A stretch of 64,000 nucleotides of DNA from positions 254,374 to 318,373 of the IMG/VR virus record IMGVR_UViG_3300028840_008185; one strand, written 5' to 3'. The position numbers and the translations under genes were made by a program. The stretch's first letter is position 1. Each line of letters begins with the position of its first letter. Positions 1,337-60,471 of this stretch are shown in pieces. Under the pieces are notes generated by a model that made no database searches, had not been told where the DNA came from, and was given only the letters and a program-made list of their open reading frames with translations.

Positions 1337-1369
1337 GTCTTTCTCCACGGTGCAATTTTTCAAATCTAC

Positions 1370-3342: not shown

Positions 3343-3350
3343 TTTTCATC

Positions 3351-4043
3351 CTATTTGTGCCAAACCTGAATGTCAGGAACTGAATTCACTAACAAATCAT
3401 TATCTATTTCACTTCTTGAGGCAACGAAAACCGCCCTTGTTACTGGATATTTCTTTTCTGCTTTCCAATCGAGGGGATATAGCTCTTCAAACTTGGGCTG
3501 CGTAATCGGCATATACACAAAATCCATATGCTTTTTCAATTGGTCAAAAACCCACCTCCTGGATGGCCGACAGGCTTCCCCACTGACGCTCTGGGTTGGG
3601 TCATATGTGAAATCTTTGCAATAGTCGATGCTTTTGCCACTATCGTATGAAACTATAGTCTCCAAAAGCAAGAGTGAATCGCACCAATTACACATACGCT
3701 CAAGAGCACCGAACGGGTCACCAAGATGATAGAGCAGACCGTAGGAATAAACTATGTCAAACTTCTCATCAAATTCCACATTTGGGGTGTCAACATCAAG
3801 CAAGAAGGCTCTGACGTGGGGAAATCTTTCCCCAAACACCGCCAGATTTTCTGGTCTCCCCTCTGTGCTGGTTACATCACAATCACGGTCAAGAAAAAAC
3901 TGCGTGTGATCTCCAATCCCTGCGCCAAGTTCTAGAACGGTTTTGTTTGTTAAATCAAGCCCCAGGCTTGCCAGGTGCTCAAAACGCACCTTGTTTACTA
4001 GCTGGTATCGTGGGGACGTAAAAGCTTCTTTAGGATCAATCAT
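3351..4043 (-). CDS. Class I SAM-dependent methyltransferase
   Basis: VLELGAGIG motif I, TEGR acidic site, FDIVYSYGLLYHL. Confidence 0.88.
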   Translation of the reverse strand: MIDPKEAFTSPRYQLVNKVRFEHLASLGLDLTNKTVLELGAGIGDHTQFFLDRDCDVTSTEGRPENLAVFGERFPHVRAFLLDVDTPNVEFDEKFDIVYSYGLLYHLGDPFGALERMCNWCDSLLLLETIVSYDSGKSIDYCKDFTYDPTQSVSGEACRPSRRWVFDQLKKHMDFVYMPITQPKFEELYPLDWKAEKKYPVTRAVFVASRSEIDNDLLVNSVPDIQVWHK

Positions 4044-4824
4044 TTAAACCTCCGTAGCCTATAATTTCGGATATGGGGCCAGCAACTCTGGCAATTTCAT
4101 TCTTTCGCGATTGTGGCGCCGCTGGCCAAGGAGGCAGTGGATCACTAACAACCGTGGGGGTCTTAGAATGTTTTATAGACGTGAGTCGTTGCACAGCCGT
4201 AGGATCTGGTGCTGGAATCTGCAAGAAAGCACAAAGCTCAGCAACTCTTTTGCCCTTTATCATGTCTTCAAACTTGTATCTAAAAATTCGCTCTTCTGGA
4301 ACATCTTCGAATAATTCAAGTATGCTGCTATTTACGAGTCTCCATGACCAAGCACACTTTTCTAGCTTGCTCATACTATCCCATTCATCGTAGTGTGGGT
4401 CACCTTTCCTGGGAGACGGCCACCACCACATATTTTTCCCCGCGAACACCTCGTAGTCGAAAATGCCAGAATTATGAATGGATCTAATTTGTGTTCTTGG
4501 ATCTCTCATCATATAAATGAATCTGGCGTCGGGAAAAACCTTAAAGAGTCCCTCCACGTAAAACGCAAGCATTCCATTTATTTCTCCAAAATCTTTGCCC
4601 GATTTCCACACTTCCTGGACAAGAGGAAGGCGCTCTTTTATAACAACCTCTTCGGCAGCCAACTCCCCTCTGTATACTTCCTGGTACTTGTCGAACATGG
4701 CCTTGGGGGAATCCTTGGTAATAATCTCATGATCGCAATACACAGAAGGCACCAAGTTCAAAATCTTGGCCAGAAGGTGCGTCCCACCATATCCATGACC
4801 GAAACCAAAAAATACCTTATTCAT
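4036..4824 (-). CDS. Sulfotransferase-like P-loop protein
   Basis: N-terminal GFGHGYGGTHLLAKIL (variant 5-prime-PSB loop), FIYMMRDPRTQIRS (3-prime-PB motif) and RYKFEDM. Confidence 0.75.
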   Translation of the reverse strand: MNKVFFGFGHGYGGTHLLAKILNLVPSVYCDHEIITKDSPKAMFDKYQEVYRGELAAEEVVIKERLPLVQEVWKSGKDFGEINGMLAFYVEGLFKVFPDARFIYMMRDPRTQIRSIHNSGIFDYEVFAGKNMWWWPSPRKGDPHYDEWDSMSKLEKCAWSWRLVNSSILELFEDVPEERIFRYKFEDMIKGKRVAELCAFLQIPAPDPTAVQRLTSIKHSKTPTVVSDPLPPWPAAPQSRKNEIARVAGPISEIIGYGGLND

Positions 4825-5701
4825 TCCTTTCTCCCTCTTTTCTCAAAACGAGCTTATCCACTATGGAATCTGGGTTCCCCCACTCGTGGAAAGTATTTAC
4901 TACAACCTTTCTCTCTTGCAGATTTTTCCGCATTATCCCTAAATTATGAGACTTCAGGACATTCCAATCAGGCGTAAACCTAACGCTATGATTGTCGGTC
5001 TTGTCCGGTATGCTGTGGTCCTGGTGTATGCCGACCATACGATGCTCAAAGACGGGCTGAACGCCAGACATTCTCATCCTGTTGGCAAAGTCATCGTCTT
5101 CTCCACATATCCCGCCCAAAAACCTTTCATCTACTCCGCGCATGCGCAGGACGTATTCCCTTTTAACAGCCATAAAGAACCAGTATGCTGGCGGGTGCGG
5201 CGGGCGCGTCAGACAGTCAACCTTCGCTCCGGGATACTCCAATATTTCAACAAAGGGCCTGCTCTTCCATTCATCATTTTTGCTCATGTGATCATTAAAC
5301 AGAGAGCTGCTTAAATACACCAAACCGTAAGCACACTGTTGTCTATTGACCATAGTTGAAGCAACAGCCAGGTTGTTTTCAGCTTGCAGGATCTCAGGTC
5401 CCGTGATGACCGCGACATCTCCAAGCGCACATCTAAAGCCAACATTATTGGTCAGGGCTGGAGTGAATGATTTAACATCGTAGAAGCTCTTGTTCTGATC
5501 CACCCAAATATACTGAAAATTAATTCCACTTTCCTCGTGATACTTTTTGCACAAATAAAGCAAATCGTCGCGCTTGGCGTCATCCACCATCACAATTTCA
5601 AAATCATCTTTGGACAAAGTTTGTTTAGCATAGGTATGAAGCGCCCTGTCGAACAGTTTTTCTCTATTATCACATGCAGATATTACCACCGAAACTTTCA
5701 T
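4817..5701 (-). CDS. Family 2 glycosyltransferase with GT7-like C-terminal motif
   Basis: VSVVIS...FEIVMVDDA, NNVGFR, and GVDERFLGGICGEDDDFANR..GIHQDH. Confidence 0.85.
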   Translation of the reverse strand: MKVSVVISACDNREKLFDRALHTYAKQTLSKDDFEIVMVDDAKRDDLLYLCKKYHEESGINFQYIWVDQNKSFYDVKSFTPALTNNVGFRCALGDVAVITGPEILQAENNLAVASTMVNRQQCAYGLVYLSSSLFNDHMSKNDEWKSRPFVEILEYPGAKVDCLTRPPHPPAYWFFMAVKREYVLRMRGVDERFLGGICGEDDDFANRMRMSGVQPVFEHRMVGIHQDHSIPDKTDNHSVRFTPDWNVLKSHNLGIMRKNLQERKVVVNTFHEWGNPDSIVDKLVLRKEGERNE

Positions 5702-6339
5702 CCATTCACCTTAGGGGCGCACACAAAGATACTTGACGTGCCGAAATGTTTTCTAAACCAATTGTTTTCACTCATAAATTTGGGCAAATACTTGAAAGAT
5801 TTGGGCATCCTTCTTCCCGTATCCTTTATAATACGGAGATTCGATTTACCTATGAGCTTTTTCCAACGCCTATGATACATAAAGCGCTCATCCCCATACT
5901 CCTTTGTCTTGTCCCACCTTCGGGCGTTTGGAATATCAAAAATGACTTTTTTGCCCACACGGGCAGACTCGTTCAAAAGTTTGATAATATCCTCATCACT
6001 GAAGTGCTCTAAGAAACCTTGGTGAAAAATACAATCTATGCTGCCATCACCATAAGGCATGTCGAATGCGTCAACTTTTTCCACCATAAGCTCTGGCATC
6101 TTTTCCTCGATGTCTTCGAGTAACTCATCCTCTATGTCCGATGCCGTTACGTTGTCTCTACCACTGTATAGCAGGACTAGTGATGTATAACCGCTCCCAG
6201 ATGCTATTTCCAGCAACGAGTCACCCTTCTTGGTGTTTTTCAAAATCTCATTGATGTAATGTTCCTGGATTAGAACAGTCCTAAAGACTGTGAACTTGTC
6301 AAAAAAGCCCTTCCACTTTCCTATTTCAGCCAATTTCAT
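5698..6339 (-). CDS. Class I SAM-dependent methyltransferase
   Basis: LLEIASGSG, VTASDI, DAFDMPYGDGSIDCIFHQGFLEH; AGGAG RBS. Confidence 0.9.
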   Translation of the reverse strand: MKLAEIGKWKGFFDKFTVFRTVLIQEHYINEILKNTKKGDSLLEIASGSGYTSLVLLYSGRDNVTASDIEDELLEDIEEKMPELMVEKVDAFDMPYGDGSIDCIFHQGFLEHFSDEDIIKLLNESARVGKKVIFDIPNARRWDKTKEYGDERFMYHRRWKKLIGKSNLRIIKDTGRRMPKSFKYLPKFMSENNWFRKHFGTSSIFVCAPKVNG

Positions 6340-6374
6340 GTCTATGCTCCTTTCATTTTTGCATTATTTTTTTC

Positions 6375-7367
6375 CTAACCTTGCGTTTTTTGGATTCCTT
6401 TTTTTGGATTCCTTTTTTTGGGACTCCTTTTTTTGGATTCTTTTTTTGGATTCTTTTTTTGGACTAGTTTTTTAATCCCGTCGCCCTTAATAAACCTTAG
6501 ACACTCTTTTAGACAAAAATCGGGGACACCTCCATTCATTATATTCCATCTAAAATCTCTGCACCTTTTGCTGTTCCAAATAGTTAATACTTCTTGGTTT
6601 AAAATGTTTCCCATTCTGCCCTTGGCATTATAATCAAAACAGCACGGACCCACAGTTCCATCGGAAAATATCACAAGGCGGTGCCGAAGCTCACAGTCCT
6701 TTATAGCGTTATGGACACTCGTAAGGTTGTCGCAACGCACCCGCTTAAACTCTGGAAGGCTAGATTCTTCTAGATTGTTACTCACGAAGATTGGAGTAAT
6801 AAGGGCGCTTTCTGCGCCAATCTCCTTGCACTTTGCTTCAAAATCTTCAATTTGATCTTGGTTGTGTTTGAAAACTATAAACTGTCCCACAATTTTTGCA
6901 TTACTTTCATATTTATCTCTAAAATGAACCAAATGCCTTAATGAATCAAAGGCTTTCTCTAAGCTACCGCCAACACGAAGTTTTTCATATACCTCCTGCG
7001 TCGTTCCGTCTATGGCTATTCTTATGTCGTCCGTCCCAGCCGCTATTATTTTTTCGGCCATGTCCGCATCAATTAAGTTGCCGTTGCTGGAAATACCCAC
7101 CTCCGCGAATTCTTTTGTGTATTTTATCATTTCTATCAAGTCTTTGTTAAGAGTTGGCTCACCCCATATGTAGACGTAAACTCTTTTCGCATAGGGTCGG
7201 AGTTTATCGGCTATTTTTTTATATGTTTCTAGGGACATATGCCCCTTTTTTCTGTCAATGAGGTCCGTACCTAGAGCACACTCAGAGCAACTGAGATTAC
7301 AGCCTAGGCTTATTTCAACGTAAAATATACTCGGAAGTATTTTTTTAAAGCGTCCTTTAGGGATCAT
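6375..7367 (-). CDS. Radical SAM enzyme with C-terminal SPASM/twitch domain and Lys-rich tail
   Basis: CNLSCSEC (CxxxCxxC), WGEPTLN, SNG, IAIDG; C-terminal DGTVGPCCFD...GNI...IWN...CLKEC. Confidence 0.92.
   Translation of the reverse strand: MIPKGRFKKILPSIFYVEISLGCNLSCSECALGTDLIDRKKGHMSLETYKKIADKLRPYAKRVYVYIWGEPTLNKDLIEMIKYTKEFAEVGISSNGNLIDADMAEKIIAAGTDDIRIAIDGTTQEVYEKLRVGGSLEKAFDSLRHLVHFRDKYESNAKIVGQFIVFKHNQDQIEDFEAKCKEIGAESALITPIFVSNNLEESSLPEFKRVRCDNLTSVHNAIKDCELRHRLVIFSDGTVGPCCFDYNAKGRMGNILNQEVLTIWNSKRCRDFRWNIMNGGVPDFCLKECLRFIKGDGIKKLVQKKNPKKESKKRSPKKRNPKKGIQKTQG
6386..6473. repeat. Array of seven T6-7 tracts separated by GGA(T/C)TC(C)-like cores (13-15 nt period)
   Basis: T-runs start at 6386, 6399, 6413, 6428, 6441, 6454 and 6468. 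Cores are ggattcc, ggattcc, gggactcc, ggattc, ggattc, ggactag. Confidence 0.9.
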
Positions 7368-7385
7368 AAATTTTGGTCCTCTCCC

Positions 7386-8345
7386 TTAGCTGTTCAAAAG
7401 TTTCTTCCCAAATTCCATCGTGATTTCACCGCCCTCGCTCGTCAATAATAATTTGCGATCAGGGCACACAACCACAACTAGATCGAACTTATTCCATGCG
7501 GCTCTGGGCGCAGCATCTATAAGATTTACGTAACTCAATTTGTCCGATATGTTTTTAGAACTTTCACTCTTAAGGACATGAAAATTCATATTTTTATAAT
7601 GCTTATGCACCGATTCAACGGCAGCAATTAGCATCTCCTCGGGAGGGTTATTAACTGGTATAAATGCCGTCACCGGATACATGTATTCAGATCTCACACC
7701 ATACCTGCGAAAGTATATGATTTGGAATTTTTGTGCGTGGCCCTGAGACCTGTAAGCTTCTACATTGCCACTTTTAAGGCTGTCCCTGCAATCCAGATGG
7801 TCTATTTTAGCGCCAGGGCAATTTACAATTTTTCCTCCAAGCCGCAAAATCCTGGCATCAAATTCATTGTCTTGGCCATAATAGGGAAAATCAGTGTTCC
7901 AGTAATTCATTGTTTTCATGGTCTCATTGAGAACACAGCCTATAAGTGGAGAGGGAAACCCTCTAATCGCACCATCTCCCTGTGTGGAAAAGCCGCCCAT
8001 ATCTTTTGGCCCAAGTTTTTGCATAAGGTCGTGCATTAGAGTGAGTGAGTTTCCAAGAGGCACGGTGTCATCGCTTAGCCAAGTGATATACTTTCCTGAA
8101 GCCTTCTTAAACCCCTCGTTGTAAGCGTGGGTAATGTTGGTCTTTTTGCCGCTAAATATGGGTACAACATTTCTGGTTTTTCGCACCTGTTCCAACCACT
8201 CAATAGTGCCATCGGTTGAGCCGGCATCATTTATAACCATTTCTATAGACATGTTCGGAGTACTCAGTACCTTTTGCACTACTTTTTGCAAAAGCTCCAG
8301 CCTATTACATGTTCCCATTACAACACTTAAATCTGAATTCGACAC
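7386..8345 (-). CDS. Family 2 glycosyltransferase
   Basis: LSVVMGTCNR, VINDAGSTDGT, AYNEGFKKASGKYITWLSDD, YYGQDNEFDAR. Confidence 0.92.
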   Translation of the reverse strand: MSNSDLSVVMGTCNRLELLQKVVQKVLSTPNMSIEMVINDAGSTDGTIEWLEQVRKTRNVVPIFSGKKTNITHAYNEGFKKASGKYITWLSDDTVPLGNSLTLMHDLMQKLGPKDMGGFSTQGDGAIRGFPSPLIGCVLNETMKTMNYWNTDFPYYGQDNEFDARILRLGGKIVNCPGAKIDHLDCRDSLKSGNVEAYRSQGHAQKFQIIYFRRYGVRSEYMYPVTAFIPVNNPPEEMLIAAVESVHKHYKNMNFHVLKSESSKNISDKLSYVNLIDAAPRAAWNKFDLVVVVCPDRKLLLTSEGGEITMEFGKKLLNS

Positions 8346-8366
8346 GATTACTCCCTTATTTGTTTA

Positions 8367-10439
8367 TCACCCAGCATTTGCTTTCTCAATTACCAATTGA
8401 ACTTCTTCTATAATGTCTCTTCTATCCTTCTTTTCTAAAAACTTATCGGCGTAGAGACGAACGACCCGCACATCATCTTCCATTTCTGGTTGCGGCTTGC
8501 GAACTATTATATAGTCAAAAAGGCCAAACTTATCTAGCGCTGCTTTGCCAAGAGCATCAGAAAAGCAAGTGAATACCATATCGGGCATTCTACGTCGCAG
8601 GGTAACAAGCCTATCATGAAGTCGTTTCACCAAGGCTGAATCAACATAAAGTAAGTCGGGTTGATACTCAGCCACTCGCTTGACTACGTGCGAGTTACAA
8701 AATATGCCTTGAAAATCTACGTTGGCGAAAGAAATTCGGTGCTCATACCTTCTGTCCGTTGATTCTTCAACAATTCCCATAACCCTATATTTTCTTTCCT
8801 TTGTGCGAAGCAGGCGGTGCTCCGCAATCTCTTCATCAGAGGCCTCCTCCACCATGCCGATCCTTATAGCAAGTTCTTTTACTCGTCTGTAATCAGAATG
8901 TTGTTCTATAACTTTTGCAGCGCCCCTCTTGCCCATTTCAGCAGCTTCAACGGGGTTATTGAGATAGTGTCCAACAAGTCTTTTACACTCACTTAAATCT
9001 TTAAACCAAGCAACATCCTTTCCATTTTCAAAATACTTTTCTAGCCCTGGTATATAGTGACAAACCACCGGAGTCCCAGACGCCATAGTGATTAGTTGTC
9101 TATCAGAAAAATACATTGGTATGTTATTAAAATGGTTTACATTAATAGCAACTTCTGCGGCATTATATACCTCGTTTTGCGTGTAGTATCCGATAGCTCC
9201 TCTGCAAGAATTAGTTCTTTTCCAGCCAGACCCGTAAAGTGCAAATCTATTCCCGAAAGTATTATAAAGTTCGCACACTATTTTTTTTCTCAGGTTGCTG
9301 TCAGGAAAATGGCTTGAGCACAAGGCACAGAACACCACATCATGATCGTATTTTGCACGAAGACTGGCTCTTTTTTCTTTGCTTAATGGTAGAAACTTTT
9401 CGGTATTTACGCCTATCTGCCAGTAATCTACATTGGGACACCCTGCATTTCTATACAGTTTTACTTGCCCCTCACTACTAAGCAACGAAAAATCCACCTG
9501 TTTGCCAATATCAATGAAATATGGGTTAACGGTTGCCCTTACATCCCCAGTCCAATTTGTTATTATTACATCGGGCAACACCCTCCTAATGTCATTTATA
9601 ACGCTCGCCGGAATCATACCAGTAAACTGAAGCTGCATATGAATCCAATCGGGCCCAAAAGTGTGACATATGTTCTTTAGAGTCTCACTTGTCTGAGCGG
9701 CGCCGTGTCTTGCAAAAAAATTACGAAAATCGAAAGTATATAAATCAAAACCATTTTTTATAAAGGCGTTTTCCATGCCTGTTTGAAATATACTTATGTT
9801 ATTGGCTGGTAAATACAGCACCTTCTTGCCACCCTCGTTGACCTTGTGATTTTTAGAAACAACGAGGCCTACTGGCGGAATTGGAAGTTTTGACTTTGAT
9901 TTTCTTCTCTTAGGGTTCCTAGGAGGTCTAGCCTTCCTATCTCTTACTCTTTTCGATCTGGGTTTCTTAGGATTCACCCTTTTGGGAGGGGGAGGAGGGG
10001 GAGCGACAGAATCAGTCGAAACCAATTTAGCTGTGGTCTGTGGCTTTACCTTCTCGCCCTTAACAAGTTCGACTTTAACCTTCCTAATCAACATCGTGCC
10101 GGTTCCTTTAGACCCTCTCCACACCCTGAAGGTCATTGGAACGGTTGGCGGAAAACGCCCGGTGACAACATCTATACTATATGTTGACCACTCACCCCTA
10201 TCACATGTTATTTCTGAGGCGGCAAAGTCGAAATTCTTGTTGCCATATATATTACAACGCACGATGCCGTTTCCACTTTCTCTGCATAGCTCTATAGTCA
10301 AGTTGTATACAGCCTTTGGAAGAACGTTGACTGGGATATACAACATTGACTTAGGGCCTATCATTGCTGTATATTTGCCGCCCCCATCCTTACGAGTCTG
10401 AATATCTCTTCCTCTCCAAGAAGGTTGTAGTATTTCCAT
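8367..10439 (-). CDS. GT-B glycosyltransferase (CgeB/Glyco_trans_1_2-like) with N-terminal beta-sandwich and Pro/basic linker
   Basis: YNAAEVAINVNH...FSDRQLITMASGTPVV..GLEKYFENGKDV is CgeB-like. The N-terminal ~130 aa are beta-rich (CBM-like, uncertain). Linker PPPPPPKRVNPKKPRSKR... Confidence 0.8.
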   Translation of the reverse strand: MEILQPSWRGRDIQTRKDGGGKYTAMIGPKSMLYIPVNVLPKAVYNLTIELCRESGNGIVRCNIYGNKNFDFAASEITCDRGEWSTYSIDVVTGRFPPTVPMTFRVWRGSKGTGTMLIRKVKVELVKGEKVKPQTTAKLVSTDSVAPPPPPPKRVNPKKPRSKRVRDRKARPPRNPKRRKSKSKLPIPPVGLVVSKNHKVNEGGKKVLYLPANNISIFQTGMENAFIKNGFDLYTFDFRNFFARHGAAQTSETLKNICHTFGPDWIHMQLQFTGMIPASVINDIRRVLPDVIITNWTGDVRATVNPYFIDIGKQVDFSLLSSEGQVKLYRNAGCPNVDYWQIGVNTEKFLPLSKEKRASLRAKYDHDVVFCALCSSHFPDSNLRKKIVCELYNTFGNRFALYGSGWKRTNSCRGAIGYYTQNEVYNAAEVAINVNHFNNIPMYFSDRQLITMASGTPVVCHYIPGLEKYFENGKDVAWFKDLSECKRLVGHYLNNPVEAAEMGKRGAAKVIEQHSDYRRVKELAIRIGMVEEASDEEIAEHRLLRTKERKYRVMGIVEESTDRRYEHRISFANVDFQGIFCNSHVVKRVAEYQPDLLYVDSALVKRLHDRLVTLRRRMPDMVFTCFSDALGKAALDKFGLFDYIIVRKPQPEMEDDVRVVRLYADKFLEKKDRRDIIEEVQLVIEKANAG

Positions 10440-10473
10440 ATTTATTTGACCTCTCTAGGTGGTATATTTGCCT

Positions 10474-11037
10474 TTATACTTTATAGCATTTTAGGTGTAT
10501 AGCTGGATAAAAATTGATATTCTCTAGTTCTTCAAAGGACGCGAAACCATGCACAAATAATAAATCCTCTAAAGTTTGACGCGTATATCCACAATAATGA
10601 TGATCCCACTTGGTTCTTTGTGTTCCGTGTATACAACGTATATACCATTCGTCATCGAATTCTGGAGATTCAATCCACTCCTTGGCAAATCCCTTCAGAT
10701 CGGGAACTGCCACATAAAGCGAGCCATGCTGTTTAAGAACTCTGTGCATCTCTTTAATATTTTTGTGTACTTCATATTGGGGGATGTGCTCCAAAACATG
10801 CAAAACTATTATCTCATCGACCTCACCATCTTCGTAAGGAAGTTTTTCAATCTCTGCTCGAACGTCGGACACGACATACGTGGGCGACTCGCCCCAGTCA
10901 TGTTTGTAATAGTTGTCCAGAGTTGTTTTATTATCCTCAAAATCCAAATTGTCGTTTGCTATAAAATCGGGAGCAGCATCTATATTTACGAACCCCTCAA
11001 GATATATAGTTCCACAACCTAGATGCAATCTTAACAT
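10474..11037 (-). CDS. SAM-dependent methyltransferase (Methyltransf_11-like, glycan-cluster type)
   Basis: LHLGCG..YLEGFVNID, EIIVLHVLEH, RVLK..G.L.VAVPD. Start moved to ATG 11037, behind a GGAGGTGA RBS. Confidence 0.88.
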   Translation of the reverse strand: MLRLHLGCGTIYLEGFVNIDAAPDFIANDNLDFEDNKTTLDNYYKHDWGESPTYVVSDVRAEIEKLPYEDGEVDEIIVLHVLEHIPQYEVHKNIKEMHRVLKQHGSLYVAVPDLKGFAKEWIESPEFDDEWYIRCIHGTQRTKWDHHYCGYTRQTLEDLLFVHGFASFEELENINFYPAIHLKCYKV

Positions 11038-11041
11038 AGAT

Positions 11042-13318
11042 TCACCTCCTAGCCCCTTTAAACATGGCATTATAGATGTGATTTATTGTAAACTCGTTGC
11101 CTTTCTTTTCCATAGCTTTTGCAAAGTTCTTGCTATTGGCAGAGAACTGTTCCCAGAGGCCCTTGTCTTCTTTCATCTTTCTGATTGCTTTGGCAAATAG
11201 AAGATAAGCATTTGGGTTCCAAACTAAAGAGCCATTAACCCCGTCGCTCACTACCTCTGATACAGCCCCAACATCTGAAGCTATTACTGGAGTGCCGCAA
11301 GTCATGGCTTCGAGAATGACGAGGGGCAATCCTTCCATATTTGATGGAAGTATTAGAGCATCAAAAGCCGCATAGAACTTCTCAACATCCTGTCTGTGCC
11401 CAACAAAGTATACATTTTTGAACTGCGCCGCTGCCTGTTTCAACGCGGCACCTTGTGGGCCATCTCCTACAAGCACGAAAGCCGCATCGGTGACTACCTG
11501 GGCGCACTTAAGTATCACTGCCAAATTCTTTTCTGGCGAAAGTCTGCCCACATAACCAACGACAAAATCTTCTTTCACGTCAAGATCTTTTAGTATTTCT
11601 TTTGAACGAGGAATCTTGAAACGATCCCAATCCACTTGTTGCGGGAGAACCGCCACGTTTTTATTTCCGTCTTTCAGGAGCTTTCTACCCATATGTCCGG
11701 AAACAGAGATGAGTGTAGCTACTAGCTTGTCTCTCGCCGCAACCTTGCACATAGAATCTTGCCACATAAGCTCGCTGTGAACAGTCTCGATTACGCGACA
11801 CCTGAAGCCTTGCTGCCATGCCTGCCGCAACACGTTGTATACTCCAAAGCTATTGTAGAAATGGACTATACTGTAATTGTAGGATTCTACGAAGCACTTT
11901 AGGGCGTATCCTTTGCCCTGTCCCGACAGATCTTGATATATAGCTCCAGTATCCTTGAATAGTTTATCTAATTCTTCACTAATGCCGGATATAAAAGCTA
12001 TATGTGGCTCATAAATGCTTTTATCTAATTTGTCAATTGTGTGCTTGATCCAAACTTCTCCTCCGCCGGCCATTTTGTATGGGACAATGTAAAGAACCTT
12101 TCTTTTGTCATTTATTCTACTACTCTTTTTGGGAATAGGTAAATCTAAAATCATCTGGGCAGCATTTTCCCAAGAGAACTCTTCAGTTGTCTTTTTCGCC
12201 GCCTCTTGGATTCTGGCCTTTTCTACGTCCGCGTTTTCATAGACCCGGCGCATCAATTCGGCACAGTGCCTCGTGTCTGGGTCGCCCACCACCGCATCTT
12301 TGTTGTGAACCCAATACTGCATGGAAGCAGGTGCTTGCATTTCACCCGTATTTATTAGTAGAGAGTTGTCATCATTGAGAAATTCAAGCTGGCCACCGTG
12401 ACGTGGCGCAATAACAAGCATCCCGCAGGCCAAAGCCTCTAATCCTGGGAGCCAGAAGCCTTCGCAGGAACTCATGCTCACGACCGCATCACAGGCAGTA
12501 TAAAGCGATCCAATGTCGGGAATATATGTGTTGATAATCTCCACTTCTGGAGGGTTCTTTCTGCCCTTAAATGCCCGTTCTAACACGCTTTCTACGTCTA
12601 CCTCAAACGGTTTGTCTGCATCGGGTTGCTTAAATTTTGTTTTCATCACAAGGCAGACATCATCATCGCCAGAAAAGGCGCTCAGATAAGCTTCTAGGAC
12701 CCTCTCATGCAGCTTTCTGTGGTGAGGTATGGCGTTGTGTAAAAATTTCACTTTCTTTTCTGTTCGCAGCTTGAACGGAGTAATTTCTGGGTTGAACATA
12801 TTGGTGTCTACGCCATGAGGCACTACCAACATCTTGCTCTCGGGTATGCCATTCTTGGCGAAAATATCATAGGAATATTGACTGGATGGAAGCACATAGT
12901 CAATTGCATGATGGTAGAGATGCCAGCCCGGAGGTAGAATAGAACTCTCAAAGTTCCATATTCCTGCGCGAGCTAGGGATTGTGGGAAAAAGCGCCTTGG
13001 AAATTGATAGAAAATTGTGTAAGCGATCTCAAGGTCATACGGAAAGTTCTTGTCCGCCACTTCTGGCAACTTGTTTTGGGGAGTGGCTTTTATCTGCTTG
13101 CCATCTTCCATTAGGTAATCCACTGGACCTTGGCTAAGTGAGCCGTGGTAACCAGGGACCAAGTATGGACGAAGATCGTCAGGAAAGTGTTCAAGATTGT
13201 TGGTGGACCTCATGTGAATTTCATGGCCCCCGATGTTCACCATCGCTCGGGCCAGATATTGCGAGACAAAGCTCCATGAGTGCTGAGTCCCTAGCATTGT
13301 ATGCCATCTAACTTTCAT
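11042..13318 (-). CDS. Tandem double GT4 (GT-B) glycosyltransferase
   Basis: Domain 1: VVPHGVD...YTACDAVVSMSSCEGFWLPGLEALACG. Domain 2: GYVGRLSPEKN...FDALILPSNMEGLPLVILEAMTCGTPVIASDVG. Confidence 0.93.
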   Translation of the reverse strand: MKVRWHTMLGTQHSWSFVSQYLARAMVNIGGHEIHMRSTNNLEHFPDDLRPYLVPGYHGSLSQGPVDYLMEDGKQIKATPQNKLPEVADKNFPYDLEIAYTIFYQFPRRFFPQSLARAGIWNFESSILPPGWHLYHHAIDYVLPSSQYSYDIFAKNGIPESKMLVVPHGVDTNMFNPEITPFKLRTEKKVKFLHNAIPHHRKLHERVLEAYLSAFSGDDDVCLVMKTKFKQPDADKPFEVDVESVLERAFKGRKNPPEVEIINTYIPDIGSLYTACDAVVSMSSCEGFWLPGLEALACGMLVIAPRHGGQLEFLNDDNSLLINTGEMQAPASMQYWVHNKDAVVGDPDTRHCAELMRRVYENADVEKARIQEAAKKTTEEFSWENAAQMILDLPIPKKSSRINDKRKVLYIVPYKMAGGGEVWIKHTIDKLDKSIYEPHIAFISGISEELDKLFKDTGAIYQDLSGQGKGYALKCFVESYNYSIVHFYNSFGVYNVLRQAWQQGFRCRVIETVHSELMWQDSMCKVAARDKLVATLISVSGHMGRKLLKDGNKNVAVLPQQVDWDRFKIPRSKEILKDLDVKEDFVVGYVGRLSPEKNLAVILKCAQVVTDAAFVLVGDGPQGAALKQAAAQFKNVYFVGHRQDVEKFYAAFDALILPSNMEGLPLVILEAMTCGTPVIASDVGAVSEVVSDGVNGSLVWNPNAYLLFAKAIRKMKEDKGLWEQFSANSKNFAKAMEKKGNEFTINHIYNAMFKGARR

Positions 13319-21700: not shown

Positions 21701-24700
21701 GATACTGCAATGTGATGAGTTTCCGATCTTTCCCAATCCTGTATGTTTGTGCTCAACATTTTAAGGCGAGTGTTATCGTCATAGACCTTAAAGCGCAAAA
21801 ATCCTTTGCCATCTTTGAATAAAGACATGCGGCAACGATTTTCTGTGAAGCCAGTATCAAAGAAGTAATGTAGATTGTCAGATGTGAAATCTATCCCATC
21901 AAAACCAGCCAGGGCTCCGTTATAAGCGTCGTAGGCGTCGAAAGCCATATTCATGGAGTCATAAGCATCGACTATGAAGGCAAAGTTCACGGATTCATCA
22001 GTGGATCTCAGGGAGTCGTTTACTTCGTCAATACTATAGCCATCGTAGCCATCATAACCATCTGCGGTCGAGGCTTCAATTACATCGTAAAACTCGCCAG
22101 TCGTAGCCAAAGTTCCAGTGAATTCTCTGCTTTCGGCAATAGGTGCTCTAACACGCAATCTCCACTTATTAGAAGTGGAATCAAACCAAATGAAGTATCC
22201 AACCGCACTGTGCAGGTTGCTGGGTCTTCCCAACACGGAAGTATCAGTGCGCTCTAGCGTAAAAGGTATTTCAATTGGGTTCGCATTGTTCGAGCCGATA
22301 TACACCTTGTCCGGTTGATATGTGCCCTCAAACTTTATGTCGAAAGTTATTGCAGCATCATTGTCTATACCGTCCCACTCAGGAATTACGAAAGCTTCCC
22401 AAGTTCCCTCACTGAACCTAAGATTGGAGTTTGCTGGAAGGCTTGCACTTTGTCCGTCAGTGTCGAGCAGCAAACCATCTCCAAACTTTCCAGGAACAAA
22501 AGTGGGCAATTCAGAATCAGTATTAGCGGCCAGTTCCATTTCCATCAGGTGGAAGAAATCTCTACCCAAAATCCACTCTAAGAACACAGACTCGATTATG
22601 TTCGGATCTATTTGAGTCAAGCTGCTTACAAGCTGTTTAATAGATGGAATAGTTGGGCCCTTTGGAAACGTTTGCAGGGAGCCCTTCACCGCATTACGGT
22701 AGGTTTCTCTATCCAACAGCTCCGGAATTGTGGAAAGCTCTTCTATGCCCGTGAGCACACCAAAGTTGTCCCTAAGGCTATTTCTCAATGCGCCATAGCG
22801 ATATGTTACAAAATATGTTTCGTCTTCATCTAGCGTGCTGGAAATGCTCCAGTCAAGAACGTTGTCACCATACTCATAGTCGATCAGTATCTCGTCGGAG
22901 GTATATGTGTAATCCAAATACATACGGCCAGAAATGTAGTCAACCAATACAGCCGCTCCAGCTCTAAGCTTCGCTTTGTATACAGCCTTAGCTAAAGAGC
23001 CTGCCGTGGCGGTTGTGGTCGAGGGCAGGTAAATCCTGTTATTGACGGCATCAATATATCCGTTGGTGCCCTGCGAAAAGTAATTTATAGAGTTGTTCAA
23101 GCCGCTTACATTGCTTGCCGAAACCAAGGCAACTAGGCTGCTTGCAAACATAGAGGCTATTCTCGCAGCGTTTACATATAGGCGAGAGCCATCAGTTTGA
23201 ATGGTGAGACCCGCGCCGTCGTTGTCATCGTCTATGGAAACGCCATCGGCACTCATTACGATTGTATTGCCTGAAGTTGAAGATACAACTGCACCCTCAG
23301 AAAAATCTATTGGATCTGGTCTAACCTGCAAATCGGTCACTTGGAAGATGTGATCTACGCGAGATATATTGTCTCTCACTGTGACCGTGTTTCCATTAGT
23401 TCCTGCTACAACCACAATAACAGTGCCATCTGTCAACGTTCGCTCTCCAGCTGCTTCTAGATCTGGAGTTTCAACAGTGGTGTCAGTAACAGTTCCGACT
23501 CTAAATACTTCAGTATTGGAAACGCTAACCGACGGGCTCCTGTAAATATCATCAACTCTTATGATATGGTCGTTACGAGTTTTAATCAAACCCCTTCTAT
23601 ACGAGGCATCTCCAATGTCGGAGCTTGATCCAGAATTTCTAGCCAAATAGGCAACCCCGGATTCATAATCTACCATATAATCACCAAGCTGTTGCAACCT
23701 CTGAAGGTTGTCCGCTATGGAATCATCTGGGTCATAAAAGAACTCTCGCAGAAAAATATCAACATCAGAAAAGGTTAGGGTGGTGTTGAAACTCGAACCT
23801 ATGAAGCTTCCTATGGCCGAGCCAATGTCTGTATCTGGAAGCTCTATTCTGAATGCCACAAATGTTTTACCAGTGATCGTAATCTCTTCGGTCACGACTA
23901 TCTGCGCCTGAATTACTTGGTCGAATTCCGCAGCCTCTCGCACCACATCCACTATGTTTGGAGGAGTCACTGAAGAGAAGTATACTTGGTTCCCCGTGAT
24001 TCTGGTTGGGGTATATATCTCTCCGGTTGTTTCATTAAATATTCTGAATACTTCTTCTACCTGGTTATTCTCGGTGACCAGACCAATGGTGTCAATTAAT
24101 CTGTTCTCTACGCGCTCACCTATGACCTCAATGTGAGTTAGTAGCTCGTAATCAGTGCCTTCTGCATAGGTGTCCTCATAGTCGAACGTAACGGTTGCCG
24201 CATTGCCCCTTAAATCTCTGCCCGGCAGAGAAGCTATTTCGTTAAGATCAGAGAAGAACACATAATCTAGCCCTTCCTGGAATGTCTGTTTGAACTTATA
24301 TGTGGCCACTGGAGGAACTGTGGTTGTTCCATCAGTCCCCGAGCCATCTACACCATACACAAACGCTTTGCCAGTAGTATAGTCGATTGAATATTGACCT
24401 GGCGAACTGGGCAAGCTGGCCTGATTGTATACAATCTCAGTCACAAACGCCGGGTGTTTTTGTGTTGGGTCAAAGTTTTTAGCAGGATCCAAGAAGGTGA
24501 CTCCATTCAACCTGGGCACAGCACCAGTGGAATCAACTATGGGTGCATGGTCAAAGAAGAAAACTGTAGCAACCGCTTCTACGCTTTCTCTAACTATATC
24601 GACGGTTGTGGCCACCTCAACAGTGTCTGGGTCTATAATACGCCCAAGACGCTTATATTGATAAGAGATTACGAACTTATCATTTCCACTTGGAAATGGA

Positions 24701-57720: not shown

Positions 57721-59739
57721 TCAGGTAATTATAGTATGCGTATGGTTTAATACTTCTTGGATAATACCATTAAATATTACATGGTTGTGCCCCTGTGACT
57801 CCAGCGTGGCGGTCTTCAATGTAGCAATAGACGTGCCCTGCGGTATAATAATCTGATGTTGGTGTGCTGGAACCGCAGGTGCAGCATTCACCGTGGTAGT
57901 GCCTGTCACAGGATTTGGGCTTGCATCCCTAGTTACAGGGAATTGATAGATTATGTCGGTCTTCGGCACCCTCTTTAACGCTAATTTCTGGGCGCCTGTC
58001 TGAGTGAAGAAAGCTTTGTTTCTGGTCACATTTAACACAAAATATCGCCAAGCTTCAGTATTATCAGGATTAAACCTTATTAATATATCTCTATCCTTAA
58101 TAGCTGGGAACGGTAATGTCCAACCGTTAGGTTCATAGGCTGGCTCCAGTCCGCCACGATCCACTATATTCAAATCATCCGTGGCTGGATCTATTCTCAC
58201 CAATATTCTTCTATCTGGTCTTCTTGGGTTGAAGAACTGAGTGTAGCCCTGTGTGAATCCAGTTCCATAACAAATTGGGCATCTCTTATCTGGATGCTCT
58301 CTTCTCTGCATGAAACAAGGACATCTGGCTCCTGTCCACATCCTCCTAGCCAATACGAAAGGCTCACCAGTTGTTTCCAAAAGCAACTCTTCCCTTTGAA
58401 GCATATGGGTCCTAACGTCCGGAACTCTTACTTTTACATTCTTAGAAGGATCAGTTGGGTCTTTTATCATCTGAACGCCGCCCCAATAGGATCCAGAGCA
58501 TTGTCCCTCCATAAAACTTATTGGAGAGCGTGTTCTATATGAACCGCAATAGTCGAATCTTGGGAAATCTCCCGAGTTGTCATTGTTCGTCCCATCTGTA
58601 GTTAATGAATCTACAGTCTCTTGCCTAAATCTCAAATAGCCATCAGCGTAGCCATCGGTGTAACCATAGGCATACCCATCATACCCGTCTCTATATCCGC
58701 TTAATGCACAATCGTCGCTGTGCAGAACATTTGTAATCGCATAATTGGGCTTTTGGAAAGTCGGCTCAGCCTGGGCTATGATGGTATTGCCATCTTGTCT
58801 TCCTGGATACAGGAATATATTTTGTCCAGCTACGTGGGCTTCTCCTCTCGTTCCTTCATATCCGCGACCATCTGGACGAACTATAAATCTCGGAGGAACC
58901 TGGCTCTTTGCACTATAGGTTATAAGCTCGTCACCAATTCTCAATATTCCAAAGTCAGGGAACCCACTAACGGATGAAGCTGGAATAATCAAGGCTGTGG
59001 AACTAACTGATCCACTAACATAGGCATCAGGATAGAAGAACATATTGGTTCCAGCTTGCCTGAGCCCTGTTGTCGTAAATAGGTTTGGATCAAACTCACC
59101 AGCCCTAACACCAAAGAACAATTGATCACCAGGAGCGATTCCTCCAATTGTAGTCGTAGTGTCCTCTACTATAAACTCTGGGTAGCCGTCAAAAACGTCG
59201 GCTCTCTTATGCGCGATATAGACATTGTAGAACACCACATTATCTTCATCATAGGGATAAGCTTGTTTCCAGTTAAGCTCAACTTCAGTTCCAACTCCCT
59301 CATCTAGGGCCGCTACCAGTCCCAAATCTGTTGGCGGGAAGAACGGCCTATTAACTATGCAGGGTCTAGTTGGATTCGACGGAATGGGCTCTGGAGGTGG
59401 AGGGTTATAACCTGCCGTAAAGAATACGTAATCATATGCGTCTAAATTATTATACCCATCGCGCACGTCCATGTGGACTGCAATTTGAGCAGCCGCTCTA
59501 ATAAAATCTGGAGCCTTTGGATATATTCCAACAACCCATTTCCCTGTGCTAGGGAAAATCTTGCCCGTATAACCATTAACAAACGCACCAGCAAGAATAG
59601 CCTGGTAGCCATCAATGGAAGCCGCCAGGGTATTTATCTGAGCGCCGTTGGGCTGCTCCAAAACCGTAAAGCCCACAAGGGTGGTTCTTGGAACATCTGT
59701 TTGGTTAGGCGTTGGAATAAAGCCGGTAAACTGAGCCAT
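57721..59739 (-). CDS. Neck/head-closure-like protein with Ig/FN3 extension, DGY array, Zn-binding motif and His-rich tail
   Basis: FN3-like VELNW...FYNVY...GVRA; ARCPC...RCPICYGTGF; C-terminal HQH/HNH/HTH. Located among head-tail joining genes. Confidence 0.55.
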   Translation of the reverse strand: MAQFTGFIPTPNQTDVPRTTLVGFTVLEQPNGAQINTLAASIDGYQAILAGAFVNGYTGKIFPSTGKWVVGIYPKAPDFIRAAAQIAVHMDVRDGYNNLDAYDYVFFTAGYNPPPPEPIPSNPTRPCIVNRPFFPPTDLGLVAALDEGVGTEVELNWKQAYPYDEDNVVFYNVYIAHKRADVFDGYPEFIVEDTTTTIGGIAPGDQLFFGVRAGEFDPNLFTTTGLRQAGTNMFFYPDAYVSGSVSSTALIIPASSVSGFPDFGILRIGDELITYSAKSQVPPRFIVRPDGRGYEGTRGEAHVAGQNIFLYPGRQDGNTIIAQAEPTFQKPNYAITNVLHSDDCALSGYRDGYDGYAYGYTDGYADGYLRFRQETVDSLTTDGTNNDNSGDFPRFDYCGSYRTRSPISFMEGQCSGSYWGGVQMIKDPTDPSKNVKVRVPDVRTHMLQREELLLETTGEPFVLARRMWTGARCPCFMQRREHPDKRCPICYGTGFTQGYTQFFNPRRPDRRILVRIDPATDDLNIVDRGGLEPAYEPNGWTLPFPAIKDRDILIRFNPDNTEAWRYFVLNVTRNKAFFTQTGAQKLALKRVPKTDIIYQFPVTRDASPNPVTGTTTVNAAPAVPAHQHQIIIPQGTSIATLKTATLESQGHNHVIFNGIIQEVLNHTHTIIT

Positions 59740-60284: not shown

Positions 60285-60471
60285 GCTGCTGCCTCTCCTC
60301 ATTTTTAAGTACTGAAATAGCAAACACTTGCTCATACCTGCTCATCTGTTCTTCCGCTTGCTTCATAGCATTTTTAAGTCCAAGTATTTCCACTTTTATC
60401 TCTGCCGCACTTCTTGGATTTTCTACACCAGCATATATTATATGCTTCTTGACCAATCTTTCTACTACCAT
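60193..60471 (-). CDS. Hypothetical coiled-coil protein
   Basis: AAGGAG RBS 7 nt before the ATG; overlaps the peptidase gene by ~92 nt. Confidence 0.6.
   Translation of the reverse strand: MVVERLVKKHIIYAGVENPRSAAEIKVEILGLKNAMKQAEEQMSRYEQVFAISVLKNEERQQHASQTESDPEAQKSAGREETEEQGAPGKDS

What the first reader, a model, noticed from the sequence alone, without database searches (positions are those of the whole stretch)
58636..58698. Densest tyrosine array: SGYRDGYDGYAYGYTDGYADGY in the neck protein
Seven Tyr in ~22 residues with four DGY, in a linker between the Ig/FN3 region and the Zn-binding neck domain. It is the best single substrate candidate for testing the DGY hypothesis.
Basis: partly seen in the sequence, partly recalled or inferred. 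Interest (0 to 1): 0.6.

Follow-up and report, generated by a model that had tools for sequence, protein, structure and literature searches.

The report
Conserved Asp-Gly-Tyr array in phage neck
The tyrosine cluster is real: it is this phage's copy of a strongly conserved Asp-Gly-Tyr repeat in the neck (stopper) protein of an uncultured huge-phage lineage, whose outer virion proteins all carry the same three-residue motif far above chance, for a purpose not yet known.

Summary
Confirmed. Residues 347-368 of a 672-aa minus-strand protein (window 57721-59739) hold seven Tyr and four DGY, the densest Tyr 22-mer in the 318-kb virus record.

**The protein.** It is a stopper (head-closure) neck protein of the Staphylococcus phage 812 gp97 type. 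It has the beta-barrel fold and the same CPC-(X)n-CxxC zinc loop. It also carries N-terminal Ig-like, FN3 and beta domains and a C-terminal tail with three invariant HxH motifs.

**The array.** It is not a casual linker. In 87 long-form homologues each D, G and Y of DGY-G-x-DGY-R-DGY-DGY is at least 90% conserved. The last DGY is kept even in distant relatives.

**The motif.** D-[GA]-Y is a lineage-wide feature of neck, fibre and baseplate-periphery proteins. DGY occurs 77 times against 6 expected. It is in-frame only, independent of GC content, and absent from head, tube and non-structural proteins.

**The enzymes.** The sulfotransferase, the radical-SAM enzyme and two methyltransferases are missing from relatives that keep the array. 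Only the glycosyltransferase and GDP-6-deoxyhexose core is conserved.

**Reading.** Most likely (0.4) the array is an assembly-ordered docking tether. Tyrosine glycosylation (0.25), glycan binding and metal binding remain open. Function is untested.

The parts
57721..59739 (-). CDS of the 672-aa stopper-type neck protein (P0001)
   Evidence: ORF and translation. 118 homologues, all metagenomic, on contigs up to 460 kb. 560 cluster representatives found with the C-terminal profile.
59410..59739 (-). N-terminal Ig-like beta-sandwich domain (residues 1-110); absent from the ~530-aa short-form homologues
   Evidence: AF2 model: all-beta, pLDDT about 90. Foldseek hits to Ig/FN3 tandems. Short forms align only from about residue 127-140.
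59080..59346 (-). FN3 domain (residues 132-220), preceded by a Pro-rich linker (111-131, window 59347-59409)
   Evidence: The profile matches FN3 domains of titin and ephrin receptors at residues 146-213. Homologues P0061 and P0086 carry PF00041. The linker has pLDDT below 50 at 116-126.
58720..59079 (-). Third beta domain (residues 221-340)
   Evidence: AF2 pLDDT about 90-95. Weak PHROG 4406 'virion structural protein' match at 230-308.
58636..58719 (-). Four DGY plus three further GY/AY tyrosines; the last DGY (366-368) is the ancestral anchor.
   Evidence: Sequence. pLDDT below 50 at 341-365. Each D, G and Y of the core is at least 90% conserved in 87 long-form homologues, which carry 3-8 D[GA]Y units with a mode of 5 (one outlier has 1); short forms have 1. 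The anchor DGY is kept in distant subfamilies, and extra DGY units were gained independently.
58417..58635 (-). Pre-stopper region (residues 369-441): short helices and loops with conserved Cys, Gly and Tyr
   Evidence: AF2 models. Conserved columns Y418, G420, G421 and C414.
57928..58416 (-). Stopper / head-closure beta-barrel domain (residues 442-604)
   Evidence: VIA-align: phage 812 neck 8q01_S, Z 10.8, rmsd 2.9 over 136 residues; further neck proteins of FCWL1, phiCD508, Pam3, T4 gp13/14 and phiKZ. Foldseek PDB 8qkh_A, E 4.8e-6. BFVD Bacillus phage G gp175, E 4e-10.
58270..58323 (-). Tetra-cysteine loop C473-P-C475 ... C487-P-I-C490 (probable Zn site)
   Evidence: The four Cys are at least 90% conserved. 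[quoted passage not shown] Twelve homologues carry an intein inserted exactly before C490.
57724..57927 (-). C-terminal beta extension (residues 605-672) with three invariant HxH motifs (H626/628, H651/653, H666/668)
   Evidence: Invariant columns in 58 sequences. pLDDT about 90. One subfamily lacks this extension.
22036..22062 (-). Second tandem array, (DGY)3, in the 2288-aa baseplate-periphery or fibre protein (residues 1183-1191 of CDS 18742-25608)
   Evidence: The orthologue in G005 has a 7-unit array nearby. About half of the 44 (DGY)3 sites in IMG/VR lie in homologues of this protein or of the 1540-aa protein.
3..13318 (-). Glycan operon: three GT2, a Zn-ribbon protein, GDP-mannose 4,6-dehydratase, an epimerase/reductase, three methyltransferases, a sulfotransferase, a BtrN-like radical-SAM/SPASM enzyme, a GT1_2 protein and a double GT4.
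   Evidence: Pfam. Conserved in relatives: GT2 (3-788), GMD, the reductase, GT2 (4817-5701), GT1_2, the methyltransferase at 10474-11070 (three of the four close relatives) and the double GT4. Not conserved: the sulfotransferase, the methyltransferases at 3351 and 5698, and the radical-SAM enzyme. The GT4 N-domain is present in 19 of 19 further lineage records.

Best explanation
The array is the local, slightly degenerate copy of a conserved (DGY)n module. It sits at the N-terminal boundary of a phage-812-type stopper (head-closure) neck protein. I read it as a non-enzymatic docking tether.

**Proposed mechanism (inferred).** The segment is floppy in the free subunit. In the assembled hexameric neck it becomes ordered. 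Its Asp-Gly turns, stacked tyrosines and the invariant Arg350 then pack against neighbouring neck subunits or partner proteins. This fixes the outward Ig-like/FN3/beta-domain arms (a built-in collar) to the stopper ring.

**Origin.** The array arose by multiplication of one ancestral DGY at the domain boundary.

**Wider context.** It uses the same D-[GA]-Y unit that this phage lineage has spread over all its outer virion proteins. The motif is therefore probably a general surface or interaction motif of the lineage.

**Shown:** the protein's identity, the conservation of the array, the motif statistics and the gene order.

**Inferred:** ordering on assembly, and what the array docks to.
For: - **Identity.** Stopper fold plus a CPC...CxxC loop. 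The gene lies between the head module and the tail module: the major head protein is upstream in G004, and the tube paralogues, tape measure, gp25-like and J-like genes are downstream.
- **Conservation.** 15 array positions, including Gly and Arg350, are at least 90% conserved in 87 homologues, while the family's mean column identity is 39%. Only one internal point varies in length. That is the behaviour of a structured or partner-bound element, not of a spacer or a mucin-like acceptor tract.
- **Low model confidence.** The monomer model has pLDDT below 50 at the array, as expected for an assembly-dependent segment.
- **Precedent.** In phage 812 the stopper's N- and C-termini are resolved only in the virion, where they interact with decoration proteins (PMC12886913).
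- **Ancestral anchor.** The anchor DGY is kept in distant subfamilies, and extra units were gained independently near it.
- **Scattered sites.** DGY sites elsewhere usually follow I, L or V. In the P0001 model they sit at hairpin turns or loops, so the unit is compatible with folded beta structure.
- **Enzymes.** Four of the proposed modifying enzymes are not conserved with the array.
Against: - No structure of the assembled neck exists, and the trimer prediction gave no answer. Ordering and the docking partner are therefore pure inference.
- A structural turn motif should tolerate Phe, Trp or Asn, yet DGF and NGY are at expectation while DGY is 13.8-fold over.
- Scattered DGY sites turn over between orthologues while their density is kept, which is sequon-like behaviour.
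- Arrays appear in unrelated proteins of the lineage.
- A conserved glycosyltransferase cluster adjoins the structural genes.
Confidence: 0.4

Rival explanations
1. D-[GA]-Y is an acceptor motif for a covalent modification of tyrosine on outer virion proteins. The most plausible form is O-glycosylation with a (methylated) 6-deoxyhexose glycan made by the conserved phage GDP-sugar and glycosyltransferase genes. The neck array would then be a multi-site cluster.
For: - The motif is a specific three-residue unit with a small middle residue: DGY 77 against 6.1 +/- 2.5 in shuffles, DAY 23 against 4.7, and all other DxY at expectation.
- It is confined to neck, fibre and baseplate-periphery proteins and sits at chance level in 328 non-structural ORFs.
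- Sites turn over while density is kept: 34 of 74 aligned DGY columns are singletons.
- Arrays lie in low-confidence linkers and are portable between proteins.
- GMD, the reductase, two GT2, GT1_2 and the double GT4 are conserved next to the fibre genes in all close relatives. The GT4 N-domain is present in 19 of 19 further records.
- Phage-encoded virion glycosylation has a precedent in mycobacteriophages (Freeman et al. 2023, as cited in PMC12619734).
Against: - My searches found no described tyrosine O-glycosylation of a phage protein and no D-G-Y acceptor motif.
- The glycosyltransferases are generic and most resemble lipid- or polysaccharide-acting enzymes.
- The near-invariance of the neck array is unlike known acceptor tracts.
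- The major head protein, the usual target of virion glycosylation, has no motif.
- Every genome examined has both the motif and the glycosyltransferases, so no co-variation test was possible.
Confidence: 0.25
2. D-[GA]-Y is a minimal glycan-binding unit: Tyr stacks on a sugar ring and Asp hydrogen-bonds its hydroxyls. Displayed many times on fibres, baseplate and neck arms, it would give weak multivalent adhesion to host capsule, exopolysaccharide or mucus. The neck array would be a high-avidity patch.
For: - The motif is restricted to the host-facing outer parts of the virion and absent from the tube, tape measure, hub and head.
- The requirement for Asp and for Tyr (not Phe) fits sugar-binding chemistry. 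This is established knowledge of lectin sites, not tested here.
- Motif-rich proteins carry ConA-like, BNR-like and Ig-like domains.
Against: - No known lectin uses an unstructured D-G-Y repeat.
- A neck-proximal adhesion patch has no obvious role in adsorption.
- Nothing here tests binding.
Confidence: 0.12
3. The array binds metal ions through Asp carboxylates and Tyr phenolates. These are hard oxygen ligands suited to Fe(III) or Ca(II). It would add to the Zn loop and the three HxH motifs of the same protein.
For: - The same protein has a conserved tetra-Cys loop of the pattern that binds Zn in phage 812 gp97, and three invariant HxH motifs.
- Asp plus Tyr is the ligand set of transferrin-type Fe(III) sites (established knowledge).
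- The i / i+2 spacing mirrors HxH.
Against: - There is no regular spacing resembling EF-hand, RTX or DxDxDG calcium motifs (read directly from the sequence).
- The scattered motifs sit in monomeric Ig and FN3 domains, where no symmetric ligand cage can form.
- The invariant Arg inside the array argues against a cation site.
Confidence: 0.08
4. Tyrosine O-sulfation of the acidic array by the operon's sulfotransferase, or cross-linking by its radical-SAM/SPASM enzyme.
For: - The tyrosines are flanked by acidic residues.
- The sulfotransferase matches PF13469 (E 1.8e-10).
- A radical-SAM/SPASM gene lies in the same operon.
Against: - No PF13469 hit in 5 relatives, four of which keep the array, and no BLAST homologue in any of them.
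- The radical-SAM enzyme has only one 35%-identical match in five relatives, and its best solved relative is BtrN, a sugar or aminocyclitol dehydrogenase.
- The sulfotransferase matches TPST1 only at E = 1.
- The gene context is glycan tailoring.
Confidence: 0.04

Closest known systems
Stopper protein gp97 of Staphylococcus phage 812 (Herelleviridae); PDB 8q01, 8qkh, 8qgr; PMC12886913
   Same: - Beta-barrel core: Z 10.8, rmsd 2.9 over 136 residues.
[quoted passage not shown]
- An extra external beta domain.
- A place in the head-to-tail junction.
- Termini that need partners to become ordered.
   Different: - No sequence-level match.
- P0001 is about 2.5 times longer, with fused Ig-like, FN3 and beta-domain arms, a C-terminal triple-HxH extension and the DGY array. 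None of these is described for gp97.
- The paper states that the tetra-Cys pattern is not found outside Herelleviridae. Here it occurs in an uncultured huge-phage lineage.
Bacillus phage G gp175 and other neck or head-closure proteins (T4 gp13/14, phiKZ neck, cyanophage Pam3, SPP1 gp16 class)
   Same: The same stopper or head-completion fold. G gp175 is the best viral match (E 4e-10, 23% identity). The others score Z 7.6-9.7.
   Different: Most of them are 100-280 aa single-domain proteins. I did not examine their sequences for DGY arrays.
Virion glycosylation of mycobacteriophages (Che8, Corndog, Myrna type) and chlorovirus capsid glycosylation using virus-encoded GDP-mannose dehydratase
   Same: Virus-encoded glycosyltransferases next to structural genes, and a virus-encoded GDP-6-deoxyhexose pathway.
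   Different: - In mycobacteriophages the reported glycans sit at the C-termini of capsid and tail-tube subunits. Chlorovirus capsid glycans are N-linked (my own knowledge, not tested here). Neither involves tyrosines in a D-G-Y motif.
- Here the head and tube proteins lack the motif.
- No modification has been shown.
Tyrosine O-glycosylated S-layer proteins (Paenibacillus alvei SpaA, Thermoanaerobacter) and tyrosine-sulfated acidic peptides (TPST or RaxST substrates)
   Same: Tyrosine is the modified residue, and for sulfation there are acidic neighbours.
   Different: - S-layer tyrosine glycosylation uses a membrane oligosaccharyltransferase outside the cytoplasm. No such gene was found here.
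- Sulfation sites typically have Asp directly before the Tyr.
- The sulfotransferase is not conserved with the array.

Membership tests
Stopper / head-closure neck protein (phage 812 gp97, SPP1 gp16 class) | Beta-barrel core fold | tested here: met
   Model residues 442-604 against 8q01_S: Z 10.8, rmsd 2.9, 136 aligned. Ten chains score Z of 8 or more; all ten, and most rows below them down to about Z 6, are phage neck or connector proteins. Foldseek E 4.8e-6.
Stopper / head-closure neck protein (phage 812 gp97, SPP1 gp16 class) | [quoted passage not shown] | tested here: met
   C473-P-C475-(X)11-C487-P-I-C490; each Cys is at least 90% conserved. The pattern is as described in PMC12886913. Metal occupancy itself cannot be tested here.
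Stopper / head-closure neck protein (phage 812 gp97, SPP1 gp16 class) | Gene lies between the head and tail modules | tested here: met
   Downstream: two tube-sized paralogues, tape measure, gp25-like and J-like genes. In the complete relative G004 the major head protein lies about 11 kb upstream.
Stopper / head-closure neck protein (phage 812 gp97, SPP1 gp16 class) | Forms a hexameric ring under the adaptor | tested here: inconclusive
   The homo-trimer prediction of residues 338-670 gave no answer (score 0.00).
Stopper / head-closure neck protein (phage 812 gp97, SPP1 gp16 class) | Detectable sequence homology to a solved stopper | tested here: not met
   The A2 profile against PDB sequences gave no relevant hit. 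tblastn against 50,697 phage records gave no match. Membership therefore rests on fold, motif and gene order.
Phage virion glycosylation system | Phage-encoded glycosyltransferases adjoining the structural genes and conserved in the lineage | tested here: met
Phage virion glycosylation system | Glycan covalently attached to a virion protein at the proposed site | not testable with these tools
   This needs mass spectrometry or glycan staining of virions or of co-expressed protein.
Phage virion glycosylation system | Presence of the motif co-varies with presence of the enzymes | tested here: inconclusive
   All 19 genomes tested for both show both: the window's record and five relatives and 13 further records. 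Six more records carry the GT4 homologue but were not tested for the motif. There is no negative case to compare.
Tyrosine sulfation substrate (TPST or RaxST type) | A cognate sulfotransferase conserved together with the substrate | tested here: not met
   PF13469 is absent from 5 of 5 relatives, four of which keep the array. There is no BLAST homologue either.
RiPP-like radical-SAM/SPASM peptide modification | A peptide-maturase-type radical-SAM enzyme conserved with the substrate | tested here: not met
   The best solved relative is BtrN, E 2.2e-11. Among the five relatives there is only a 35%-identical match in G004.
Collagen-like Gly-X-Y repeat | Gly at every third residue over the whole tract | tested here: not met
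   Gly sits at residues 348, 352, 355, 359, 363 and 367, giving spacings of 4, 3, 4, 4, 4.

The most novel reading that the evidence does not exclude
D-[GA]-Y is a previously unrecognised acceptor motif for tyrosine O-glycosylation. A widespread lineage of huge phages would use its own cytoplasmic glycosyltransferases and GDP-6-deoxyhexose pathway to coat its neck collar, fibres and baseplate periphery with glycan. The neck array would be a conserved multi-site cluster.
Probability: 0.2. Interest if true: 0.85.

Novelty: new variant of a known kind. Interest (0 to 1): 0.6.

Why it matters
**The protein.** It extends the phage-812-type stopper, with its zinc tetra-cysteine loop, from Herelleviridae to an uncultured lineage of 200-480-kb phages. 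It also shows a stopper with a built-in collar of Ig-like and FN3 arms.

**The motif.** This is the more interesting part. One tripeptide, D-G-Y, with D-A-Y as a minor form, is the most over-represented tripeptide in the outer virion proteins. The excess holds in all 19 genomes examined, whose GC content ranges from 30% to 56% in the six fetched whole. The literature I could search gives no described function for it.

Whatever it does (docking, glycan acceptor, adhesion or metal binding), it is a compact and easily testable handle on how huge phages build or decorate their surface. The conserved neck array gives a defined 15-25-residue peptide to test it with.

Tried and rejected
- **Homo-trimer prediction** of residues 338-670: no answer, score 0.00. 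It counts neither for nor against binding.
- **Sequence searches for named relatives.** Pfam gave nothing for P0001 and PHROGs only two weak 'virion structural protein' hits. tblastn against 50,697 phages gave no match. PDB profile searches gave only FN3 domains and chance antibody CDR matches.
- **Whole-protein Foldseek** was swamped by Ig and FN3 hits. The C-terminal part had to be folded alone.
- **DNA-level explanation** rejected. The pattern GAYGGNTAY occurs 83 times in frame, 2-3 times in each other frame and 6 times antisense, using 14 different 9-mers.
- **General property of phage tails** rejected for now. The annotated T4 structural proteins checked hold only 5 DGY. That is one control phage only.
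- **Scan of bacterial and archaeal genomes for (DGY)3**. The 120 or more hits are mostly 9-bp microsatellites or low-complexity tracts in unrelated contexts and give no functional lead.
- **Collagen-like, EF-hand or RTX-like readings** rejected on spacing.
- **Moraphage lineage** (PMC12619734) considered. That paper reports heat-shock genes in all its genomes, but G000, which is 79% complete, has no HSP70, so I make no assignment.
- **Glycosyltransferase comparisons with solved structures** are generic and do not point to protein-acting enzymes.
- **Not used or not met.** No alternative genetic code was used.
Full report
**Observation**

The window is the last 64 kb of a 318,373-bp IMG/VR virus record, with nearly all genes on the minus strand. 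ORF 57721-59739 (minus strand, 672 aa, P0001) contains the quoted string at residues 347-368. It holds seven Tyr and four DGY.

This is the densest Tyr 22-mer in the record: 7 Tyr, against 6 for the next best. Composition alone would give about 0.6 such windows genome-wide, so Tyr density is not the strong point. The strong points are these:
- P0001 has seven in-frame DGY where 0.10 are expected.
- The repeat units use different codons.
- The array is conserved in homologues.

**What the protein is**

Pfam finds nothing and PHROGs only weak 'virion structural protein' hits. A search of 5.8 billion proteins gave 118 homologues. All are metagenomic and lie on contigs up to 460 kb. Twelve are interrupted by an intein.

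An AF2 model (pLDDT 81) shows this domain order:
- an Ig-like domain (1-110)
- a Pro-rich linker
- an FN3 domain (132-220)
- a third beta domain (221-340)
- a stretch with pLDDT below 50 (341-365), which is the array
- a confident C-terminal half

Folded alone (pLDDT 84), residues 442-604 match stopper and head-closure neck proteins:
- Phage 812 neck 8q01_S, Z 10.8 (rmsd 2.9, 136 residues).
- Neck proteins of FCWL1, phiCD508, Pam3, lambda, T4 gp13/14 and phiKZ.
- Bacillus phage G gp175 in BFVD, E 4e-10.

The phage 812 paper describes its stopper as a beta-barrel core, a gating loop, an external beta-sandwich and a tetra-cysteine loop. [quoted passage not shown] The paper says the pattern is confined to Herelleviridae (PMC12886913). 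P0001 has C473-P-C475-(X)11-C487-P-I-C490, each Cys at least 90% conserved. The inteins sit exactly before C490.

Gene order agrees. Downstream lie beta-helix proteins, an 853-aa protein at the position of a sheath gene (no family match), two tube-sized paralogues, the tape measure, a gp25-like sheath initiator and a Baseplate-J protein. In the complete relative G004 the major head protein lies about 11 kb upstream.

No sequence-level match to a solved stopper exists.

**The array in the family**

I examined 87 long-form homologues, which are about 50-80% identical overall. Each D, G and Y of the core DGY-G-x-DGY-R-DGY-DGY, and the central Arg, is conserved in at least 90% of them. A single internal point accepts 0-20 extra residues, which often hold more DGY units. 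A final DGY opens the next strand. Arrays hold 3-8 D[GA]Y units, with a mode of 5.

The window's copy is degenerate. Its first unit reads DDC, its second lacks the Asp, and an extra A-Y-G-Y-T-DGY insert makes up the number.

The roughly 530-aa short forms lack the Ig-like domain and keep only the final DGY. Most also carry a DGYDGY pair about 45 residues upstream, inside the third beta domain.

A profile search of 1.84 billion representatives found 560 relatives. The final DGY (often DGYR or DGYH) is kept in distant subfamilies. Several of those have independently gained extra DGY units just upstream. The array is therefore a repeated expansion around an ancestral boundary motif.

**The motif in the virion**

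DGY is not special to this protein.
- *Abundance.* In the record's virion-module ORFs (43 ORFs, 23,236 aa) DGY occurs 77 times, against 6.1 +/- 2.5 in within-protein shuffles (maximum 16 of 2000). It is the most over-represented tripeptide at 13.8-fold. Seventy of the 77 contexts are non-redundant.
- *Specificity.* DAY is also enriched (23 against 4.7). Every other DxY, and DGF, DGW and NGY, is at expectation.
- *Restriction.* The 328 non-structural ORFs have 6 DGY, which is the chance level.
- *Protein-level signal.* The DNA pattern occurs 83 times in frame, 2-3 times in each other frame and 6 times antisense, using 14 different 9-mers.
- *Location.* Motif-rich proteins are the neck protein, a 518-aa protein upstream, beta-helix and fibre-like proteins, the 952-aa and 2288-aa proteins next to Baseplate-J, and a fibre cluster upstream of the window with ConA-like, Big_5 and BNR-like domains. 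The tube-sized paralogues, tape measure, the 1584-aa protein and the gp25-like protein have none; the 853-aa protein has one. The head-module ORFs of G004 have almost none, and its major head protein has none.
- *Context.* The residue before the motif is mostly I, L or V. In the P0001 model the three scattered DGY sit at hairpin turns or loops.

**Relatives**

I fetched five relatives whole. Their GC content ranges from 30% to 56%, and all show a 4.1-7.5-fold DGY excess with no DGF or NGY excess. Thirteen further lineage genomes show a strand-biased 3-5-fold excess of the DNA pattern over a reversed control.

Alignments of orthologues give 74 DGY columns. Of these, 34 are singletons and about a dozen are kept in all or all but one genome. 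Swaps between DGY and DAY or DSY are frequent.

Arrays are portable. G005 has a short-form neck protein, yet it carries a seven-unit array in its orthologue of the 2288-aa protein. G000 has (DGY)3 plus DAY units in the same region.

Of 44 IMG/VR sites encoding (DGY)3, about half lie in homologues of this lineage's giant virion proteins.

The annotated T4 structural proteins checked hold only 5 DGY.

**The enzymes**

Window 3-13318 encodes:
- three GT2
- a Zn-ribbon protein
- GDP-mannose 4,6-dehydratase
- an epimerase/reductase
- three methyltransferases
- a sulfotransferase
- a radical-SAM/SPASM enzyme
- a GT1_2 protein
- a double GT4

Relatives whose neck proteins keep the array do not share all of these.
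- *Conserved:* the dehydratase, the reductase, two GT2, GT1_2 and the double GT4 in all four, and one methyltransferase in three of them.
- *Not conserved:* the sulfotransferase, two methyltransferases and the radical-SAM enzyme.

The GT4 N-domain is present in 19 of 19 further records. The radical-SAM enzyme is closest to BtrN, which acts on an aminocyclitol. The sulfotransferase has no informative solved relative.

The operon reads as a glycan synthesis and tailoring pathway whose target is unknown. If the array is modified by a conserved enzyme, only glycosylation remains as a candidate.

**Interpretation**

Two patterns pull in different directions.
- The neck array's near-invariance (including Gly and Arg), its fixed architecture, the 812 precedent of stopper termini that order only against partners and the turn-compatible context of scattered sites all favour a docking tether. 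I give this 0.40. In this reading the array anchors the fused collar arms to the stopper ring once the neck is assembled.
- The strict Asp and Tyr requirement, the small middle residue, the restriction to outer virion proteins, the positional turnover at constant density, the portable arrays and the conserved adjacent glycosyltransferases all favour an acceptor motif for tyrosine modification. I give this 0.25.

Glycan binding (0.12) and metal binding (0.08) are not excluded. Sulfation or radical-SAM chemistry is disfavoured (0.04).

None of these was tested functionally, and the one complex prediction gave no answer. Searches of the paper library found no described D-G-Y motif in phages and no tyrosine glycosylation of a phage protein.

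**Verdict**

The annotation as a neck protein with a Zn loop and a linker is largely right. The substrate hypothesis is unproven and is narrowed to the conserved glycosyltransferases.

The protein is a new variant of a known kind: a decorated phage-812-type stopper. The lineage-wide D-[GA]-Y motif is an unexplained and, as far as I could find, undescribed feature that is worth an experiment.

Noticed in passing
window 58270-58272 (codon of C490 of P0001); homologues P0009, P0021, P0030, P0035 and eight others: Twelve homologues (about 1075-1090 aa) carry an intein with a homing-endonuclease domain. It is inserted exactly before the fourth Cys of the CPC...CxxC zinc loop (...CPx | C...; the intein ends in HN).
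   Followed up: partly
window 57724-57927 (residues 605-672 of P0001): Three invariant HxH motifs (H626/628, H651/653, H666/668) lie in a confident C-terminal beta extension. HxH motifs bind iron in trimeric T4 and P2-type fibres and spikes (my own knowledge). Their role on a hexameric stopper is unexplained. One distant subfamily lacks the extension.
   Followed up: partly
window 22036-22062 (residues 1183-1191 of CDS 18742-25608, minus strand): A perfect (DGY)3 in the 2288-aa protein next to Baseplate-J, followed by several DAY units. Orthologues vary from 1 to 7 units at this spot, and IMG/VR homologues reach 6 tandem units.
   Followed up: yes
window 3-13318, minus strand: A 13-kb glycan operon directly after the last fibre or baseplate genes. 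It encodes the GDP-6-deoxyhexose pathway, six glycosyltransferase genes, three methyltransferases, a sulfotransferase and a BtrN-like radical-SAM/SPASM dehydrogenase. The core is conserved across the lineage and the tailoring genes are strain-specific. The target of the glycan is unknown.
   Followed up: partly
window 59757-60335, minus strand (192 aa): A small Lys/Glu-rich protein just upstream of the neck gene. It has an HExxH-like motif (H-E-I-V-H) and sub-threshold matches to the eCIS core domain and SprT-like families. It is conserved in all five relatives.
   Followed up: no
G000:C1:225909-230816 (L172:11909-16816, minus strand), upstream of the window: A 1635-aa fibre-like protein with 22 D-[GA]-Y motifs. 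Its N-terminus repeats a roughly 24-aa unit three times, each unit ending in G-F-DGY-(A/S)-D-P-R. It has Big_5 and BNR-like matches.
   Followed up: partly
G000:C1:240849-253386 (L173), upstream of the window: The same record encodes a sigma-70-type factor, the PrkA / DUF444 / SpoVR trio, DnaB-like and UvsW-like helicases, and a tubulin/FtsZ-family protein. None of them contains DGY.
   Followed up: no
G008:C1:327544-328728 and G010:C1:159945-161084 (relatives): The GT4 homologue is read through in-frame stops in some relatives: 2 TGA in G008; 1 TGA and 1 TAA in G010 and in G022. This could mean pseudogenes, sequencing errors or recoding. I did not examine it.
   Followed up: no
window 55369-57708, minus strand (779 aa): The beta-helix protein after the neck gene starts with a Y-P-G-A-I-DGY motif. 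In other phages I recall a D-S-F or D-T-F type sequence at the equivalent N-terminal anchor of tail fibres (from memory, not tested). This suggests the lineage has converted ordinary D-x-aromatic positions to DGY.
   Followed up: no
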